Shown piece after piece: positions 29,696 through 55,900 of a DNA stretch of 64,000 bases. Under the pieces are notes generated by a model. The model did not search any database. It was not told the origin of the DNA and was given only the letters and a program-made list of their open reading frames with translations. Source of the stretch: Vitrella brassicaformis CCMP3155. Lineage: Eukaryota; Protista; Chromerida. Position 1 is the stretch's first letter. Every line of letters begins with the position of its first letter. Where the stretch lies: contig CDMY01000198.1 in assembly GCA_001179505.1 (NCBI GenBank), positions 1-64,000 of the forward strand, read 5' to 3'. Both the position numbers and the translations under genes were made by a program.

Positions 29696-29722
29696 AAATA
29701 TAAAATGTAGACAGCGATAGTT
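29696..29722 (+). promoter_or_regulatory. Conserved TATAAAA-containing motif, copy 1 (others at about 34767-34800 and 37035-37068)
   Basis: aatataaaatgtagaca(a/g)cgat occurs three times; the latter two copies also share cacgtccgtc. Confidence 0.5.
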
Positions 29723-29769
29723 CATCGCCACCTCTGTCTGCGTCGAGGCGGCTGCGCTATGTTGTTTGG

Positions 29770-31874
29770 GGCGGGGGGTGCTGAAATCAGCCACGGAAGG
29801 CCGAGGAGCTACATCATACACACACATAGGTGCAGCATTGCCGAGGTGGCGAACATTTATGTGTGTAGTCCCAATGCTCACTTACCTCTTGTGCTGTGCT
29901 GTGCCCGTGGTAAAGCTGTAGAATGAAGTAGATGAGCTCCCCGGACGGCTGGTACGGCATGAACGACGCCAGCATGGCCGCCACAGACTGTGGTGTCTGC
30001 AAAGCGCGAAAATAGGAAAGAGAGAGAAGTGTGTGACGTATGCGTGTGTCTTCATCTATCTGTGTGCGTACGTACCGTGAGTGTGGCGATGCGCTCGATG
30101 GTCTGTGGGTCGGCCCCCAACGCCGTCAACAGCACCTTTCCTGGTCGATACACACGCACAGAAGGCAAAGCAAAAGGCATGCGTCCTGCCTGCCTGCAGG
30201 TGTCCTCCCTCGTGTGTGGTGCAAGCAGCCCATCTACCTGTCTTGCGGAGGTCATCCGCTGCTCCCGAGCCCTGCAGACAGACCATTGAACACACACAAA
30301 AACGGCAATAACATGTCCCTCCACCCAGGCTCTTTCCCTCATTGCAACCTTACCGAGGAATCGTCATAGTCTAGGTGGTCCAGGTCGATCAAGACCGCCC
30401 TGGCCTTGAGGACCATGACGTTGTTAGCCTTGACGTCGCCGTGTGAGAGCCTGCGGTGGTGGAGGAAGCCGAGCGCCTTCGTAGCCGGCCTGAACGGAAC
30501 CAAGGGAGGGAGAGAAGCAGGTGAGGCTGTTGATGCGTGTGATGACGAGTAGATGAGGCATCTCAACCGACCGGCACCTGATGACGCACACAACACAGGA
30601 AGGACCACACACAAAGAAGCCGCCTTCACCTCTCTCCCTCTCCCTCCCTCCCTCCCTCTCTCTCTGATACGATGCGCGCGTACATGAGGGTGCCTCGCGG
30701 GATTTCTGCAGTGTTGTTGTACCCCTCACAGAAGTCGTGGAACGTCCGGGTCGCCACCGCGTGATCGTGTATTTTGGCTGCGATGAGGTACACGTCGCCC
30801 ACCCGCTCCACCTCCGATGGGTGACGGCACAGTAGTGTCATGTCATATCTAAAGCCAGCCTGCACACGTCCGCACATCCACACACACACACACACACACA
30901 CGTCTGGCGCAAGGTGTCACGGATGACACACTTGGCGCCGGCCTCCGTCTGACAAGCCAGCTCCCCCACGGTCGTCCCTGTAGACACGTACACAGACGCA
31001 GGAGAAAGCGGATGGGATGGATGAGTGCTGTGTATGCTATGCGATGCGTGTCTGACGAGACGTACCCCTCAGGAGCTCCATGACGTACACTGTCCGCCCT
31101 CCGACGTTGAAGGAGAAGTAGTAGCGGGGCAGGTGCAGACAGTGTCGGAGTCCTTGCTCGCAATACATGCGATACGTGTGGCGGGCGTACTCCTGACATG
31201 CCGTGCCGCATAGGCACACAGACAGACAGACAGACAGGCAGAGACAAGCCGTTTAAAGATGGCAGATCTGTGTGTTCTCTCTCTGTGCGTCTCGCACACG
31301 TACCCCCCCGGCAGACATGTTCGGGTCGAGGACTTTGACCGCATACTGCCCCGCCCGCCACACAGACCCCTGGCCGCCGAAGCCGAGCTCTTGTCGGCCT
31401 TGAGGCCGTACCGGTAATAAGGGTACTCCTGCACACAAACGACACAGCAGCAGCTGGTGAGCCGATTGCTGCCTTGTTGCTGTGATCTGCCTTGCTTACG
31501 GCCACTGCCCTCTCGCCCACGTCGTTCTGCTACTTCTGCGGTGCAGACAGACAGACAGACAGACAAACAGAGAGACAGGGAATGATGTGATGGACACAAA
31601 CGGAGACGGAAGACCACACATGAAGGGCGTGTGTGCCTGACTGATCCCATGCAGCCATGTCACGCAGTGCAGCCCAGCTCACCCGCTCCACCTCCTTGTA
31701 CTTCCTCCTCGTGGCGATAACCTCCTCCATCCTTTCCGGCTGGTGCTGCCACCTGCGCCAACGGGCCGCCTCGTCGGCCGCGATGGCCTCCTCGAGGGAC
31801 GGCAGGGGCTCAAAGGCATCGGGATCTTTGTTTATTGGCGCATAGCAAAGCACCTTTTCCATTGCGCTGCTCAT
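29770..31874 (-). pseudogene. Protein kinase-like family copy A (frameshift and inserted segment)
   Basis: LGFGGQGSV, YAVK, VYVMELL, HGDVKANN, VLIDLD. 1-nt deletion at about 31390; about 430 bp insertion between RDTL and KALGFLH. 3' end approximate. Confidence 0.75.
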
Positions 31875-32599
31875 CGTGCTCCTGAAAGAACAGACATGGG
31901 AATTCTGTGTGTGTGTGCGGCGGTGGCACAGGCTGACGAGTGTCATGTGCATGTGTCAACCGACCGACCTGCTCGAGGGATGTATGATGATGTCGTCGTG
32001 CATCCCTCGGTACTCGCTGCAGAGCTGTGTCAGTGTGTTGTTGTCAATACCCACACGGGAGACCGTTGCAGGCAGCCCCGCCTCTGTCCAATCCACCCAT
32101 CCACAGCGCCACGCCGACGGGTGGTCGTGCACCTTCAGACGCACCGCCTTGGCAAGCTGCCCTACCACCGGACACACACAAGAGAACAACGCAACCAATG
32201 TGCGGGGATGGTCATCCGGCTTCCTGGCTGCCTCTTCTCTCTGCTCACCTGATCTCGCATCAGCTTTACTATGACACGCCGGGCCGATTGCTTGCTTCCC
32301 GAGAGCCGCTCCGAAATCTGAGGACGACCCACACGTCTACGATATCGAATTTGCTCAGCCATCCTGAACGTCAGCACAGGGGTTCGTGTGCGTATCCGTC
32401 GATGGATGATGGATGAGCGGCTGGCTCTCACCTGTGTGTGAACCGCAGTGGTGCCGGCAGAAGGAGCCACAAGTTTGTAATCGCCGATGCAGCGGAAGCA
32501 AAGGAAATACCGCGGATATAAGATGTAGACAGCAATTGGAGCTCCCTCCGCTCTGCACGATTCTATCATGAGGAACGCAATGATAGCATGCTCGGAGGC

Positions 32600-34649
32600 A
32601 TGTTCTGATGTGTCACTCGCCGTGCTGGGGCCAGGGGGGCACTCTCGAAGATGAGACACGATGAACCGACATGGGCGCGCAAGGTTTGGTCGGTCAACGG
32701 GCGATAAAGGCCGCTGCAGCGGGAGGAGGCGGGGTGGCAGGCGGGCCATGGACGATGGGGCTGGGACGTCGGAATGGCGGGCTGCACGACGGGCACTGCA
32801 CAGATGACGACATAACAACACGAAGAAACAAACACAATGAGAACATCCTCCGCTGATTGTGCGGCTGTTGTTGTCTTGCGTTGTGTTGTGATCGGTTGCT
32901 CCCCGTGCTGGTACGGCATGTGCTGTGCCCCTTGTGGCCGCACATAGATGTCTGTCGGGGCGGCAGTCTCCTTTGGCGGCGGAGGCGGGGGCGATTTGAT
33001 GGTAGTGCTGGTACGGCATGTGCTGTGCCCCTTGTGGCCGCACATAGATGTCTGTCGGGGCGGCAGTCTCCTTTGGCGGCGGAGGCGGGGGCGATTTGAT
33101 GGTACTGGGGGGTGCCGATTTCAGCCATGGGTGGCCGAGGAGCTGCGAGCAGAGACGAACAACACCGACATGAGGGCGCATGGCCGATTGATTGTGTGTT
33201 TGTTTGTGTCTTGCTCACCTCTTTTGTCGTAGAATTCCCGTGGAACAGCTTGTGAATGAAGTCGGTGAGCTCCTCGGGGGGCTGGTGCAGCAGCTGGGAC
33301 GCCAGGATCGAAGACACCTCAGATGGTGTCTGAACAAGCAGAGACGCAGCCACGCCCTGGTTGTGTCGCTGATAGGCTGTGTGCGATGATTGCCTGGCTT
33401 ACGATTAGATCGGCGATGTACGCCGCAATGTGCTCCTGTATTCCTAGCGCCGCCAGCAGCACCTCCCCTGAGCGAGAGAGACGAGACAGACAGAGCAAAA
33501 CGATATGATGCCTGCGGGTTGGCTGTGTGTGTGTCTCGTCCGTGCCGGTCTTCTGCACGTCCTACACTGCCCCCGAGGCCTGCCGTCAACCCAGCAGCAC
33601 ACAGCAGACATGCATGGATGGTGGTCGGATTGTGCTATCCCCCCACCTAACTTACCGACACATCATCGATGTCCAGGTGGTCCAGGTCGATGAGCACCGC
33701 ACGGTCGTCACACACGATGATGTTGTCGGCCTTGACGTCACCGTGGAAGTGTCGCGAACAACACGCTTGGCGCCGGCCTCCCCCAGGCGGCCAAAATTCC
33801 ACACGGTGCGCTCTGTACAAATGGACACATAGAGTCAGAAGGGGGATGAGAATGTATGCTTGTGGTGCGGTGCGGTGCGGTGCGGTCAAGTGCGTTTCTC
33901 ACCCTGGAGGAACTCCATTACGTACACTGTCCGCCCGCAGGTGTTGAATGAGAAGTAGTGCCGGGCGATGTGCGGACAGTGCTGGAGTCCTCGTTGCCGG
34001 TACATGGAGAAGGTGGGCCGGGCGTACATCTGCAGAAACATTAACAGCATGACACGCACAGGGGTGTGTGCATGATCTGTTCTTATATATCTGTGTGGTA
34101 TGCGTACCCCTCCCAGTGAGTGGTCCGCTTCAAGGACCTTGATGGCGTAATCCCCTGCCCGACACACCTTCCCTTGCCGCCCGCTGCCCAACGCGCCCTC
34201 CTTCCTTAGGCCGTATCTGTAGAACAGATACTCCTGCAGAGCGGAGACAAACAGGCAGGCAGGCAGACAGACAGAATCTGCTGTGGCGGCGTAGCTCCGT
34301 CTTTGAAGACCTACCTCCGCGCTCCTCGCGGCCGCCTGCGCCTCCCAATCCTGCAATGACACACACAGAGAGAGAAGGTACCACCAGTGAGACCATGCAG
34401 CTGGAGAGTCTGACGGCATGAGTCTTTCTACTAGAGTTTAGCAGAAAGACTGACCTGCTCCGCCGACTTGAGCTGGTGACGGGCGGTGAGGACCTCCTTC
34501 AGCTCCTCTGCCGTGTCGTTGTCAATGGCGGCCCTGATCATCGCCTCCTCCTCGGCGACGAACTCTTCAAGAGACGGCAGCGGCGAGAACTGATCCTCAT
34601 CTTTCTTGATGGGCGCATAGACGTGGATTCTCTCCATGGCGCCTGTCAT
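32600..34649 (-). pseudogene. Protein kinase-like family copy B (frameshifting deletion, 100-bp tandem duplication)
   Basis: LGSGRQGKV, YAIK, VYVMEFL, HGDVKADN, VLIDLD, LLGHPWL. RDT is fused out of frame to HGDVK at about 33750-33760. 3' end approximate. Confidence 0.75.
32905..33104. repeat. Perfect 2 x 100 bp tandem duplication
   Basis: gtgctggtacggc...gcgatttgatggta at 32905-33004 and 33005-33104. Confidence 0.95.
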
Positions 34650-34966
34650 TCTGCCGTCTGGCGGAGCCTACATCGCCCCCAGTTCCAAGTCATGTGCTGG
34701 GTGCTGTCACTTCTGGTGGCAAAGCCAATCTGTCCGCGGATTCGGACTGCGGTGAGCTCTTTGACACGTCCGTCGAATATAAAATGTAGACAACGATGTC
34801 TGGAAGAAGAAAGAAAAGAAAATATGTTAGTCGTGGACCTCTCTTTCTCACCTTTGTCTCCTTCCTTCCCTCCATCTGTCGGCAATGTCTCTTCCCCCCC
34901 ACCCTGCGGGCCTTCCTTTCGTCTTGAAACGGAACTCACGAGGGACCGCATTGTGGCGCAGACAGG

Positions 34967-36899
34967 CTAACGGGCGAGAATGGGCGGCGGCGGGAGGAGG
35001 AATGGCCGGTGGCCGCGGGGCAGCAACAAGGGCGGCATCATGGCGGGGGCGAATGGCCACACTGGCGGGCGATATGGCGGTGGGGGCGGTGCGACATGGG
35101 CTGTCAAGAAAAAGGAGAGAATCAATGGCAATAAGCTGGATGAGTTGTGTCTTTTGTCCGCTCACCGATAGGAACTCGTTGGGGCGGTGGTGGCGGCAGC
35201 CGATACACGGGCGGCACATACGTCGGGCCTGTCAAGGCAAAGACCCCATACAGTGTCAGAGATCAGGTTCCCTTATTGCAATGGATCTCAGTTGTGTCTC
35301 TCCTCCACTCACCGGCAGCGGCAGCAGCTGGTGCTTGTGGTGGGGAGGTGGTGAGCCACGGGTGGCGGAGGGCCTGCACAACCGAAGGAGCGAGGGACAT
35401 ACAGGCGACACACAGCACACAAGACGTCCACGAATCTGACAGGGAGAAGTGTCCTTGTTTCTTCCCTGGCTAACTGACCTCCTCAGCGCTCATGCCCTTG
35501 AGAAGCCCTTCGATGAAGTCCACCAGGTCGGTGGACGGGGCGAAGGGCAGCAGGGCCCGGCGGATGGCCTCCTCCGTCGGCTGCATTCCAATGGGGGGTA
35601 AAGCAGAGAGGGAAGCCGTTAGGCTGAATGCCCGTCTGTGACGATCATTTCATTGGTCCTCTCGTACCGTGGAAGCGGCGATCTGCGAAGCCTTGGCATG
35701 GTCAACCCCAGCCATCCGCAGCAATGTGACCACTGCCAGATAGCAGCGACAGAGACAAAGAGAGAGATACGACAATCCCAAATGCCCATCGGTCATGGGA
35801 ACCTACCCGTATCAAACATGTCTCTCCTCGCCCCCTCGCCCTTCTGCACGCCAAAAGCACACACAACACACAGGAAGACCAATCAGCCAGAAAGCCAGAA
35901 AGCCATCGATCGATCGATGGTCTCACCTTGTCCTCATCCATGTAATCCAGATCGATCAGCACAGTCGACCCGTCTCGGCGCTTTATCAAATTTTCTGGTT
36001 TGACGTCGAGGTGGGCGAGCCGGCGGCGGTGGAGGAAGGAGAGAGCGTGAAGGAGGTCGCTGGCGACGGCCCTCACGTCTCCCTCTCCCAGGCTGCCGCA
36101 CAGCTCCCACACACCCCGGCCTGCACACATACACAGACACACACATCGGTGGATGCATGTCTCGGCTCGTGTCGCTCTTTCGCCTACCTTCAACGTGTTC
36201 CATGATAATGCAGCTGCGGCTGCTCCTTGTGACCGCGAAATCCCCCACTAGCCGCACGATATTGGGGCAAAGGGCGAGGCCCTTCTCGATGTATCGGCGG
36301 TATGTGGGCTTGTGGTGGAACTGATGAGACACAAGCAACAAAGTAAGCAAGGATATGTCGACGAGAGGAGATGTGCAAGTGATGCCTACCCCGCCGATGG
36401 AGTGCTCCGTGTCGAGCACCTTTGCCACCTTGCCCCCCTCGAGCCGCCACAAATCGGCTTGGCCGCCCTCCCCCAACTTGCCCAGCACACGTAGCCCATA
36501 CAAATCATGCAAGACGCCCTGCAGACATCAGAGAGCAAGCAATGAGAGACAGACCAATGAGTCTGCGCAGCCTGCCGGGTCACTCACTGACCTCCACGTC
36601 CCTCTTCCACACCTTGATGTCCCATTCCTGCAGACAGACCGACAGACAGACGGAGACAGCATGTGAGACAGGAGTATCCTGACGTGCGTGTCTGCCGGTC
36701 AGTGTATATCTCTCACCCTCTTGGCCAACTCGTTCTGCTTCATGGCCTCCACCACCCCCTGGGCCTCCTCCATGGTGTCGCCGTCGTCCAGGCAGACTCG
36801 GAGGGTCTTCTCCTCCAGTTGGCGGACGAAGTCCGCAGGAGGCTCCAGGGGCAGCGGCGGGTGCACTCGAGTGTGCATCTTAGCGGCGGCGCTCATCAT
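34967..36899 (-). CDS. Protein kinase-like family copy C (apparently intact), lacking activation loop; Pro-rich tail
   Basis: LGEGGQADL, KVAK, IIMEHV, HLDVKPEN, VLIDLDYMDEDK-KGEGARRDMFDT, SAEE-ALRHPWL, then a PPPPYRPP tail ending in TAG at 34967-34969. I found no frameshift when splicing by eye. Confidence 0.75.
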
Positions 36900-37749
36900 T
36901 TTCTTTGGCTTTTGCGAGATTCCCCCAGTCTGCACGCAGAGGTATTGCCAAGTGTTTGTTGGAAGCTGGCGGTCTCTCGTTGTTGCGTTACTGCATACCT
37001 CAGCGCCAGATGGATTCGCGGCAACCTTTGTTCCACGTCCGTCAAATATAAAATGTAGACAACGATGTGACGACCTGTCGCTCGCCCTGAACGACAATGG
37101 ACAATGCAGACACAAGGCAGATGACCGCACATGATGTGAACAGACCCCTCGCCCAATACTTCTGTAGGCCGTCGTCAGTGGGACCCATGTGCACCAGCTC
37201 CCCTTCTGCTCCACTCCGAACGGTACCGCGCGATGCTGCCCACACACAGGAAAGCACAGTACGTGATCTGTCCAGTCATCCATCCATCCATCCTCGGCTG
37301 CTGACTTACCGGGTCATTGATGAAGTCGGCCAAGCCCACCTGCGCATCTGCGACGGTCCAGAGGGGAAAGAGCACATCAGAAGCTCTCTGCGCCAACCTG
37401 ACAGCGCCTGAAGTCGCCGACGCGCACTGAGCTTCTCTTCAATGCGTCGTTTCTCGCGTCCTTTCAGTCACCCCTGATAAAGCGTCTAGACACATGCAAG
37501 CCCTCGCCAGCTACATCTACTGTCCGTTTCTTAGTCACCCTGACAACGCCACACAGACAGAGGCACACACATTTTAGTGTAGTGTGGTGTGCGCGTCATT
37601 TGGTCCCCCGTTCACCTTGTCGTCGTCGTGGAGGTCTCTGTTGCTGCTGCTGCTGTAAGTGTTGTCCTCGCTAGTCTTGTCCTGACCGGACCCGCCCTCT
37701 CCCAACCGTAGGTCATGAGGCAGTGACAAAGGTGGCCCCTGTGACGGTC

Positions 37750-54614: not shown

Positions 54615-55900
54615 ATGTATGTGCACGCCCGTGTTCACCCGCCCGTGCCCGTGCACCTGAGGAGATGTCCGCCCCTGCCCCTGGACCCGCCGGCCGACTT
54701 CATCCGGCAACAGGAGATGGCCGTCTACAACCACGCCCACGTCCACGCCCGCAGCGTTATGGGCAAGACGGATCCCGGCCGAGGCGAGGACGAGAGCCAA
54801 ACTGGCGAAGGAGGGCGGCGCTATCGAGAGGGTGAGCCAGCCATCAGTGAGAGCTGTCGCAAGCCACCTCTCTTGAAGGATGTTGCGGAGTTCTAGTGAA
54901 GTTCTCCGTACCTTCTCCTGTTGTGTCTGCGTGGCTGCAGGGTTGGAAGCAGGGACCCGTCGGGGATAGGGATGTCGAGGTCAGTGGCCCTGCAGACAGG
55001 CAGACACGCAGGCAGCTGACCGCGCAGGTTTCACTGGTCTGTCTCTCATTGCGTGCTGTCTGCTGGTCGCTGTGTGCAGGGGGCGCTACATGATTTGTAT
55101 TGGCTGCGTGTGGAGGGCAAGTTGGGGGGAGGCGGCCAAGGCCAGATATGGCGGCTCGAGGGGGGCAAGGTGGCGAAGGCTCTCGACACGGAGCACTCCA
55201 TCGGCGGAGTAGGCATCACTTGCACTCCATCGCTCTTGATACGGGTAGGTTCCCATGACCGATGGACATTTGGGATTGTCGTATCTCTCTCTTTGTCTCC
55301 GTCGCTGCTATCTGGCAGTGGTCACATTGCTGCGGATGGCTGGGGTTGACCAAGCCAAGGCTTCGCAGATCGCCGCTTCCACGGTACGAGAGGACCAATG
55401 AAATATATCGTCACAGACGGGCATTCAGCCTAACGGCCTCCCTCTCTGCTTTGCCTCTCATTCCAATGCAGCCGACGTAGGAGTCCATCCGCCGGGCCCT
55501 GCTGCCCTTCAGTCCCCCTGCTGGCCTTGTCAGTTTCATCGCCGCCCTGTGCAATGGCGCATCCGCTGAGCAGGTCAGTCAGTCAACAGACACACAACTC
55601 CACCTTCCCATGCCTTGTCATTCCATCTCTTGGTCATGCAGGCCCTCAAGCATGAGTGGTTGACCCCACCACCGCCTGCTGCCATGCACATGCCCCGACC
55701 AGTCGCTGCCGGTGAGTGGGCAAGGGACACTACTCATCCAGTCTATTGCCATTGATTCTCTCCTGCCCTTCACAGCCCCACCACCGCCACCGCTCATCAT
55801 GCCGCCTCCAGCACCACCTCCTGCCCCGCCACCCACCCCAATCCCGGCCCGCTGATGCCTGCCTGCAACCATGTCGTCCCTTGTGAGTTCCGCTTCCAAG
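54615..55900 (+). pseudogene. Protein kinase-like family copy D; inverted paralog of C with internal deletion
   Basis: HPP..PLDPPADFIRQ, LGGGGQGQIWRLEGGKVAK. Nucleotide-level match to C introns and exons at 55235-55570. The catalytic-loop exons are missing (junction about 55233); in-frame TAG at 55478-55480. Confidence 0.85.

What the first reader, a model, noticed from the sequence alone, without database searches (positions are those of the whole stretch)
29770..36899. Expanded family of miniature kinases lacking the activation loop/APE segment
Seen in the spliced products of A, B and C: Gly-loop GxGxQ, VAK/AVK lysine, catalytic H(G/L)DVKxxN and Mg-binding IDLD in place of DFG. Only about 13 residues follow (DYMDEDK-KGEGARR; DHLDYDDSS-GSGAAD) before the subdomain IX Asp, with no APE. 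A shortened C-lobe still ends in ePK-type EAL(R/G)HPWL. All copies share an N-terminal P.LP.LE/DF helical domain and a Pro-rich tail. The same microexon layout recurs in divergent copies, so this is not random decay. Knowledge: loss of the activation segment is typical of Bud32/RIO-like kinases, but subdomain XI HPW is an ePK feature. Inference: an undescribed, possibly constitutively active, lineage-specific kinase family.
Basis: partly seen in the sequence, partly recalled or inferred. Interest (0 to 1): 0.75.

Follow-up and report, generated by a model that had tools for sequence, protein, structure and literature searches.

The report
Kinase family without an activation loop
The alga Vitrella brassicaformis carries a small, species-restricted family of shortened protein kinases that keep every ATP-handling residue but have lost the whole activation loop; only one of the four copies in this window is intact, and whether the proteins are enzymatically active is untested.

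Summary
The window is Vitrella brassicaformis CCMP3155, contig CDMY01000198.1.

- **Copy A (34967-36878, minus strand):** an intact 11-exon gene, identical to the public model P0002 (358 aa). It has a Gly-loop, a beta3 Lys, HLDVKPEN and IDLD. Only 13 residues lie between the IDLD motif (16 residues from its Mg-binding Asp) and the alpha-F Asp, against 35 or more in canonical kinases. There is no APE and no subdomain-XI Arg.
- **Hidden exons:** the flanking introns are 62-98 nt in four paralogs on four contigs, so none can hold a missing exon.
- **Fold:** AlphaFold gives a confident ePK fold. The best structural matches are ordinary Ser/Thr kinases, not RIO or Bud32.
- **Copies B and C:** both are broken by frameshifts and in-frame TAG codons.
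- **Copy D (54615-55855, plus strand):**
- **Distribution:** exhaustive searches find the architecture only in Vitrella, at about ten loci, roughly half of them decayed.
- **Open points:** no RNA evidence was obtainable and no paper describes the family. Catalytic activity is inferred, not shown. NFR5-type pseudokinases are the main natural precedent.

The scan noted the same kind of kinase on another piece of this genome (s1-205754).

The parts
34967..36878 (-). Copy A: intact 11-exon gene for the 358-aa mini-kinase (public protein P0002). Exons lie at 36878-36717, 36627-36592, 36518-36390, 36320-36188, 36120-35927, 35843-35807, 35732-35668, 35580-35479, 35373-35313, 35228-35166 and 35061-34967.
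   Evidence: P0002 maps exon by exon with GT-AG at all 10 introns. Pfam Pkinase scores 47.1 bits against a cut-off of 31.7.
35927..36120 (-). A exon 5 (194 nt): alpha-D/alpha-E, catalytic loop HLDVKPEN and the IDLD motif that stands in place of DFG.
35807..35843 (-). A microexon 6 (37 nt): encodes the short linker KGEGARRDMFDT that replaces the activation loop, P+1 loop and APE and runs into alpha-F. It is flanked by introns of 83 and 74 nt.
   Evidence: The linker is modelled with block-mean pLDDT 97-98 over residues 211-230.
32694..34649 (-). Copy B: pseudogene-like. Exon 5 (33812-33656) is 157 nt instead of 194, which shifts the frame and removes the end of alpha-E. TAG lies at 33562-33564 in the microexon-6 relic, next to a GC donor. 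Its Pro-rich tail carries a perfect tandem duplication of about 99 nt.
   Evidence: The public model P0008 lacks alpha-E and microexon 6. DNA contigs of runs X1 and X3 are identical to the window over 33075-35430.
29722..31873 (-). Copy C: pseudogene-like. TAG at 31530-31532 replaces the conserved Trp codon of the 36-nt exon 2. One base is missing in exon 3 near 31390. A roughly 420-nt intron with (TG)n lies at the position of the intron that splits this block in P0005. The ORF stops at 29722-29724 with no Pro-rich tail.
   Evidence: The public model P0014 reads the shifted frame and has no Gly-loop or beta3 Lys. Against the P0005 gene, exons 4-10 give dN/dS 0.38.
54615..55855 (+). A deletion runs from intron 3 to the end of exon 6, so all catalytic exons are lost. 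TAG lies at 55478-55480 in exon 8. It is annotated publicly as P0001 (237 aa).
37045..37058 (-). Short conserved intergenic motif CTACATTTTATATT, inside a conserved block of 25-38 nt. Other copies lie at 34776-34789 and 29697-29710, with a degenerate copy at 32515-32528. It sits about 130-170 nt upstream of the start codons of A, of B and of the long public model of C, and just after the stop of C.
   Evidence: Three matches against 0 expected; alignment. Its translation also appears inside the broken paralog P0004. Its role was not tested.

Best explanation
This is a Vitrella-specific family of eukaryotic-type Ser/Thr protein kinase domains that gains and loses copies and from which the whole activation segment has been excised.

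Shown:
- Copy A encodes a 358-aa protein with four parts: an N-terminal helical hairpin, a kinase core of about 220 residues, a Pro-rich disordered tail, and a conserved C-terminal PPPILAR.
- The core keeps the Gly-rich loop, the beta3 Lys (K99), the catalytic loop H-x-D-x-K-P-x-N (D192, K194, N197), the Mg-binding Asp (D210 of DLD) and the alpha-F Asp (D226). A Glu on the short alpha-C (E121) is present in three of the four intact paralogs and shifted by one position in P0007.
- A 13-14-residue acidic linker encoded partly by its own microexon replaces the activation loop, P+1 loop and APE. The subdomain-XI Arg that normally pairs with APE is absent as well.
- B, C and D are decaying copies.

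Inferred:
- The intact members bind ATP/Mg and are probably capable of phosphotransfer.
- They cannot be switched by activation-loop phosphorylation, and they lack the usual peptide-docking platform. Control and substrate choice would therefore have to come from the N-terminal helices, the Pro-rich tail or partner proteins.
For: - Identity and gene model.
- Pfam Pkinase passes its threshold but matches only profile positions 51-147, up to DFG.
- Residues invariant across four intact paralogs at 32-55% identity include K99, D192, K194, N197, D210 and D226.
- The spacing from the DFG Asp to the alpha-F Asp is 16-17 residues in the family. It is 35-75 in nearly all of the 257 kinase domains that could be scored among the proteins fetched by then; the four shorter values came from non-family proteins and I read them as chance pattern matches, which I did not check.
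- AlphaFold2 of P0002 gives mean pLDDT 84.9, with block means of 94 or more over most of the core (residues about 60-250). DLD at 210-212 leads into an alpha-F helix at 221-237. P0007:1-300 gives 88.3.
- Structural matches are canonical ePKs: Wee1 at Z 21.6 and rmsd 2.2 A over 212 residues, tied within 1 Z with ASK1, CaMKK1, PknB and Myt1.
- The family profile's best PDB match is an MK2 chain (3kga_A) whose DFG-to-alpha-F stretch aligns along its length to the family's, continuing through the C-lobe to HPW.
- dN/dS is 0.38 between C and the P0005 gene over 192 codons.
- Exon layout is conserved on four contigs.
- Only Vitrella proteins share the architecture.
Against: - No transcript evidence could be obtained. 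The three runs laid that hold the stretch (X1, X3, X4) are DNA contigs, and the one possible RNA run holds none of it.
- About half of the known loci are broken, and every family protein is a singleton from one genome.
- The P+1 loop and its Thr, which help position substrate and the catalytic Asp in ePKs, are gone. NFR5, a natural ePK with a truncated activation loop, is catalytically inactive (PMC11572979).
- The alpha-C Glu is shifted by one position in P0007.
- Active-site geometry of the models could not be inspected.
Confidence: 0.6

Rival explanations
1. The intact members are pseudokinase scaffolds, like NFR5. The fold and perhaps nucleotide binding are retained, but there is no protein phosphorylation. 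Signalling would go through the N-terminal helices and the Pro-rich tail.
For: - The P+1 loop, APE and subdomain-XI Arg are absent.
- NFR5 has a truncated activation loop, helices preceding the kinase domain that mediate interactions, and no activity (PMC11572979; PMC12750493).
- The N-terminal helical hairpin is confidently modelled and the tail is Pro-rich and disordered.
Against: Unlike NFR5, which has a degenerate Gly-loop and NFA in place of DFG, every catalytic and Mg-binding residue is invariant among paralogs that share only 32-55% identity. That pattern is hard to explain if catalysis or nucleotide handling were dispensable.
Confidence: 0.27
2. The whole family is non-functional debris. 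A and the other open copies simply have not been hit yet.
For: - B, C, D and P0004 are broken.
- There is no RNA evidence.
- The family occurs in one species only.
Against: - dN/dS is 0.38 over 192 codons.
- Open frames, GT-AG sites and intron positions are kept in paralogs as divergent as 32% identity on four contigs.
- The folds are predicted confidently.
Confidence: 0.08
3. This is a gene-model artefact. A missed exon or alternative splice form supplies a normal activation loop and APE.
For: The public models are Augustus predictions that used RNA-seq intron hints (PMC4501334).
Against: - The introns on either side of the linker microexon are 83 and 74 nt in A, and 62-98 nt in P0005, P0007 and P0003.
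- Read-through of intron 5 gives no APE-like sequence.
- The same spacing occurs in paralogs with independently split exon 5.
Confidence: 0.02
4. The family belongs to the Bud32/RIO-type atypical kinases.
For: - It has HGD-type catalytic loops and no activation loop.
- Single exons and P0005 give weak or faint RIO1, APH and Kdo hits.
Against: - Pfam Pkinase is the only family above threshold.
- The model has alpha-F to alpha-I helices and an HPW terminus.
- No RIO or Bud32 chain is among the top 50 matches in either structure search.
Confidence: 0.02

Closest known systems
Canonical eukaryotic Ser/Thr protein kinases (Pfam PF00069). Best sequence matches are PAK1/3, RAD53, Aurora A and MK2; best structural matches are Wee1, ASK1, CaMKK1, PknB and Myt1.
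   Same: Bilobal ePK fold, Gly-rich loop, beta3 Lys, alpha-C Glu, D-x-K-P-x-N catalytic loop of the Ser/Thr type, Mg-binding Asp, alpha-F Asp, alpha-H/alpha-I helices and HPW(L) terminus.
   Different: The spacing from the DFG Asp to the alpha-F Asp is 16-17 residues, against 35 or more. There is no activation loop, P+1 loop, APE or subdomain-XI Arg. DFG is DLD, alpha-C is short, and Gln and Trp are invariant in the Gly-loop region. No ePK group can be assigned: the best matches come from several different kinase families.
MAPKAP kinase 2 chain 3kga_A (also 3m2w, 3m42).
   Same: It is the top PDB hit of the family profile. Its DFG-to-alpha-F stretch aligns along its length to the family's, and the alignment continues through the C-lobe to HPW.
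   Different: I take this chain to be an engineered crystallisation construct. That is my own inference from comparing it with longer MK2 chains in the same table, and I did not check it in a paper. The Vitrella proteins are natural genes.
NFR5/NFP-type LysM receptor pseudokinases of legumes.
   Same: A natural ePK fold with a truncated activation loop, and helices preceding the kinase domain that matter for function (PMC11572979; PMC12750493).
   Different: NFR5 also has a degenerate Gly-loop and NFA for DFG, is a membrane receptor, and is inactive. The Vitrella family keeps all catalytic residues, and its proteins showed no domain other than the kinase.
Bud32/PRPK and RIO atypical kinases.
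   Same: No activation loop; HGD-like catalytic loop in some members.
   Different: Established descriptions of those families say they lack the ePK C-lobe helices. Here alpha-F to alpha-I and HPW are present, and no RIO or Bud32 chain ranks among the best structural matches.

Membership tests
Eukaryotic protein kinase (ePK, Pfam PF00069) | Profile match above the curated threshold | tested here: met
   47.1 bits against a cut-off of 31.7, E 2.7e-12. Only profile positions 51-147 of 263 are matched.
Eukaryotic protein kinase (ePK, Pfam PF00069) | Gly-rich loop, beta3 Lys, catalytic D-x-K-x-x-N, Mg-binding Asp, alpha-F Asp | tested here: met
   G84, K99, D192, K194, N197, D210 and D226 are invariant in four paralogs and align with canonical kinases.
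Eukaryotic protein kinase (ePK, Pfam PF00069) | Activation segment ending in APE (subdomain VIII) | tested here: not met
   The family has gaps across the whole activation-loop/APE block of the 32-sequence alignment. The spacing is 16-17 residues against 35-75.
Eukaryotic protein kinase (ePK, Pfam PF00069) | Subdomain XI Arg that pairs with the APE Glu | tested here: not met
   The family has G-MSAEE with an invariant G281 where canonical sequences have D-P-x-x-R.
Eukaryotic protein kinase (ePK, Pfam PF00069) | Bilobal fold with alpha-F to alpha-I C-lobe | tested here: met
   AlphaFold2 mean pLDDT 84.9, with helices at 221-237, 242-250, 255-261, 269-279 and 284-288. VIA Z is 19-21.6 to canonical kinases. 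These are predicted, not solved, structures.
RIO / Bud32 atypical kinases | Family profile match, and a reduced C-lobe without the GHI helices | tested here: not met
   RIO1 appears only at E 0.12 on one exon and as 'weak' on P0005. C-lobe helices are present. Neither family is in the top 50 structural matches.
NFR5-type pseudokinase | Degenerate Gly-loop and DFG together with the truncated activation loop; LysM receptor architecture | tested here: not met
   The Gly-loop and the Mg-binding Asp are conserved. No LysM domain was detected; a transmembrane segment was not looked for. Only the truncated loop is shared.
Wee1/Myt1 kinases | Specific sequence relationship beyond the general ePK fold | tested here: inconclusive
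   Wee1 and Myt1 are among the top structural matches, but they tie within 1 Z with unrelated kinases. They are absent from the best 60 sequence matches shown in either PDB search.
Catalytically active protein kinase | ATP binding and phosphotransfer | not testable with these tools
   Needs biochemistry.

The most novel reading that the evidence does not exclude
The intact members are catalytically active kinases or ATPases that work without any activation segment, P+1 loop or APE/Arg anchor. That would make them a natural minimal ePK core. It would show that the GHI C-lobe can be stable and the active site competent without the element thought to couple them, and that substrate recognition can be moved entirely to flanking regions or partners.
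Probability: 0.35. Interest if true: 0.65.

Novelty: new variant of a known kind. Interest (0 to 1): 0.45.

Why it matters
In established accounts of eukaryotic protein kinases, the activation segment and its APE anchor are the main regulatory switch and the substrate platform, and they are among the features that separate these kinases from their bacterial-like relatives. This family has removed that element cleanly while conserving every catalytic residue and the rest of the C-lobe. It therefore offers a natural test of what the segment is needed for: fold stability, catalysis or substrate choice. It could also serve as a compact scaffold for kinase engineering.

The significance is limited. 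The family is confined to one alga, half of its copies are decaying, and neither expression nor activity is shown.

Tried and rejected
- **RNA evidence:** the one sequencing-run search found only DNA-type holders (X1-X4). One possible RNA run (X5) held none of the stretch. Laying the runs produced no splice joints.
- **Single-exon Pfam scans:** only weak, mixed kinase-like hits (Pkinase, APH, RIO1, TCAD9), which were not informative.
- **Word search with an ORF fragment:** found only the remnant copy D. The full-length public protein of A was reached through it.
- **ESM Atlas look-alikes:** generic kinase clusters only.
- **YabT:** I recalled it as a natural kinase without an activation loop. 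The paper shows that it has one, so the idea was dropped.
- **Wee1/Myt1 kinship**, suggested by HLDVKP-N and the top structural hit: not supported by sequence searches.
- **P0095:** a bacterial metagenome two-kinase protein with a 19-residue DLG-to-alpha-F spacing. I take it as an independent case, not a relative.
- **Splice mapper on P0014:** it could not reproduce the public model of C.
- **Spliced models of my own:** I handed none to any search tool. Exons were searched by reference, and all full-length work used the public database proteins. That joined step was left out on purpose.
- none occurred.
Full report
**Where this is.** A word search with an ORF fragment, followed by a search with its hit, returned public proteins of Vitrella brassicaformis CCMP3155. 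The protein P0002 (358 aa) is encoded on contig CDMY01000198.1 of assembly GCA_001179505.1. It maps exon by exon onto window 34967-36878, minus strand, with GT-AG at all ten introns.

I passed no spliced model of my own to any search tool. Exons were searched by reference and full-length analyses used the database proteins, so that joined step is deliberately left out.

**The observation.**
- Gly-loop GEGGQA and the VAK lysine.
- Catalytic loop HLDVKPEN.
- IDLD in place of DFG.
- Thirteen residues before the alpha-F Asp (DMFDTVVTLL).
- No APE, and EEALRHPWL at the end of the domain.

The Pfam Pkinase profile passes its threshold (47.1 against 31.7 bits). It aligns only from alpha-C to the DFG position, profile 51-147 of 263.

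I scored 257 kinase domains among the proteins fetched by then. The distance from the DFG Asp to the alpha-F Asp was 16-17 residues in the Vitrella family and 35-75 in nearly all the others. The four shorter values came from non-family proteins; I read them as chance pattern matches and did not check them.

In a 32-sequence alignment the family is gapped across the whole activation-loop/APE block. It is also gapped at the D-P-x-x-R of subdomain XI.

**Could an exon have been missed?** I mapped four public paralogs onto their loci on four different contigs. Exon lengths were:
- P0002: 162, 36, 129, 133, 194, 37, 65, 102 ...
- P0005: 186, 36, 126, 127, 66+128, 34, 65, 111 ...
- P0007: 204, 36, 126, 127, 119+75, 37, 38, 63 ...
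- P0003: ..., 133, 194, 37, 65, 111 ...

The 34-37-nt microexon encodes the short linker. The introns beside it are 62-98 nt, too small to hold another exon. The 194-nt block is split at different places in P0005 and P0007, yet the protein spacing is the same. Read-through of A's intron 5 gives nothing like APE. This is strong indirect support for the models.

Direct transcript support could not be had. The three runs laid that hold the stretch (X1, X3, X4) are DNA contigs without splice joints, and the one possible RNA run holds none of it. The genome paper says the models are Augustus predictions that used RNA-seq intron hints. It does not discuss these kinases (PMC4501334).

**B, C and a fourth copy are broken.**
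- **B.** Exon 5 is 33812-33656, 157 nt instead of 194. This 37-nt out-of-frame loss removes the end of alpha-E, at the site where the P0005/C lineage has an intron. The microexon-6 relic has TAG at 33562-33564 in place of an Asp codon, and its donor is GC. DNA contigs of two runs are identical to the window over 33075-35430, so this is not an assembly slip.
- **C.** TAG at 31530-31532 replaces the conserved Trp of exon 2. One base is missing in exon 3 near 31390. The frame ends at 29722-29724 without a Pro-rich tail.
- **Public models of B and C.** P0008 and P0014 splice around or read through these defects. They lose alpha-E or the Gly-loop and Lys.
- **D.** It is an A-like gene with a deletion from intron 3 to the end of exon 6, and TAG at 55478-55480.

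Over 192 codons of exons 4-10, C and the intact P0005 gene differ by dS 0.19 and dN 0.07, a ratio of 0.38. The subfamily has therefore been under constraint, and C's inactivation is recent.

**Family size and range.** An exhaustive phmmer search of 1.84 billion representatives gave P0002-P0005, P0007, P0008, P0014 and P0001. All are singletons from Vitrella. Every other hit is a canonical kinase matched only from the N-lobe to DFG, at 107 bits or less. A profile word search added nothing, with a gap from 220 bits to 54 bits. Local tblastn found one more paralog next to P0007, at L003 843-2386 on the minus strand.

That makes about ten loci, four or five of them intact. P0004 is a broken fusion. 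The scan's note s1-205754 ('YYD catalytic loop, DLD for DFG') describes the P0007 type of the same family.

**What kind of kinase it is.** AlphaFold2 with a 32-row alignment gives mean pLDDT 84.9, with block means of 94 or more over most of the core (residues about 60-250). The tail from residue 303 is disordered. The model contains:
- an N-terminal helical hairpin (15-31, 36-73);
- a five-strand N-lobe with a short alpha-C (115-121);
- DLD at 210-212 leading into alpha-F (221-237);
- four further C-lobe helices ending at HPWL.

The most reduced member, P0007:1-300, also folds confidently (pLDDT 88.3). It has no helix corresponding to alpha-G.

Foldseek and the Foldseek-independent VIA search both return ordinary ePKs. 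Wee1 scores Z 21.6 with rmsd 2.2 A over 212 residues, tied within 1 Z with ASK1, CaMKK1, PknB and Myt1. No RIO or Bud32 chain appears. Sequence matches to solved structures come from several different kinase families (PAK, RAD53, Aurora, MK2, greatwall), so no ePK group can be assigned.

The family profile's best PDB hit is an MK2 chain, 3kga_A. Its DFG-to-alpha-F stretch aligns along its length to the family's. I take that chain to be an engineered loop deletion, which is my own inference.

**How it probably works.** Across four intact paralogs at 32-55% identity the following residues are invariant:
- Catalytic and nucleotide-binding: G84, K99, D192, K194, N197, D210, D226.
- Family-specific: Q86 and W90 in the Gly-loop region, S106-x-G108-G109 after beta3, and D217, G222 and A223 in the linker.

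The D-x-K-P-x-N signature is the Ser/Thr type (established knowledge). I infer that intact members bind ATP/Mg and are likely capable of phosphotransfer. They cannot be regulated by activation-loop phosphorylation and lack the P+1 peptide platform. Control and targeting would then fall to three elements:
- the N-terminal hairpin, with its conserved P-x-L-P-x-L motif;
- the Pro-rich tail, which contains PPxY-like motifs;
- the conserved C-terminal PPPILAR.

The main rival is a scaffold pseudokinase of the NFR5 kind. NFR5 has a truncated activation loop and functional helices preceding the domain, and it is inactive. Unlike this family, it has also lost its Gly-loop and DFG (PMC11572979; PMC12750493).

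**Novelty.** Seven full-text searches, most of them on this question, and the genome paper revealed no description of the family. It is a new variant of a known kind: an ePK lineage with a clean natural excision of the activation segment.

Interest is moderate. The structural point would intrigue kinase specialists. However, the family is small, decaying and confined to one species, and it lacks expression and activity data.

Noticed in passing
window 37045-37058, 34776-34789, 29697-29710 (all minus strand); degenerate copy at 32515-32528: A conserved block of 25-38 nt around CTACATTTTATATT lies between the kinase genes. It is about 130-170 nt upstream of the start codons of A, of B and of the long public model of C, and just after the stop of C. 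There are three exact hits against 0 expected. Its translation (IVVY.LYLT) also appears inside the broken paralog P0004, at the point where that copy is truncated. It could be a promoter or terminator element, or the edge of a duplication or mobile unit.
   Followed up: partly
window 54615-55855 (+): A fourth, deletion-bearing copy of the kinase gene (copy D) lies about 18 kb from the tandem trio on the opposite strand. It is publicly annotated as a 237-aa protein (P0001) by a model that splices around its stop codon.
   Followed up: yes
window 31308-31537: In run X3, which carries a different organism code from X1, the only contig over exon 3 of C carries one extra base after 31388. That base restores the reading frame. 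The contig also has 7 listed base substitutions, while neighbouring contigs of the same run are identical to the window. This looks like a patch of gene conversion or a strain difference. The TAG in exon 2 is unchanged there.
   Followed up: partly
window ~32910-33110 (-): The Pro-rich tail of copy B contains a perfect tandem duplication of about 99 nt, read off the sequence.
   Followed up: no
window 30492-30910 (-): Copy C has a roughly 420-nt intron starting with a (TG)n run, at the position where P0005 has a 98-nt intron. In B the same place carries a deletion that removed the intron plus 37 nt of exon. This looks like an imprecise intron loss.
   Followed up: partly
L003 843-2386 (-): A second YYD-type family member sits about 3.6 kb from the P0007 gene on contig CDMY01000342.1, in divergent orientation. 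It was not among the best 150 hits listed by the exhaustive protein search.
   Followed up: partly
L005 215-3019 (protein P0095): A two-kinase-domain protein from a metagenome-type assembly (taxon not shown; GCA_050303175.1) has a first domain with only 19 residues between DLG and the alpha-F Asp and no APE. It appears to be an independent natural loss of the activation segment.
   Followed up: no
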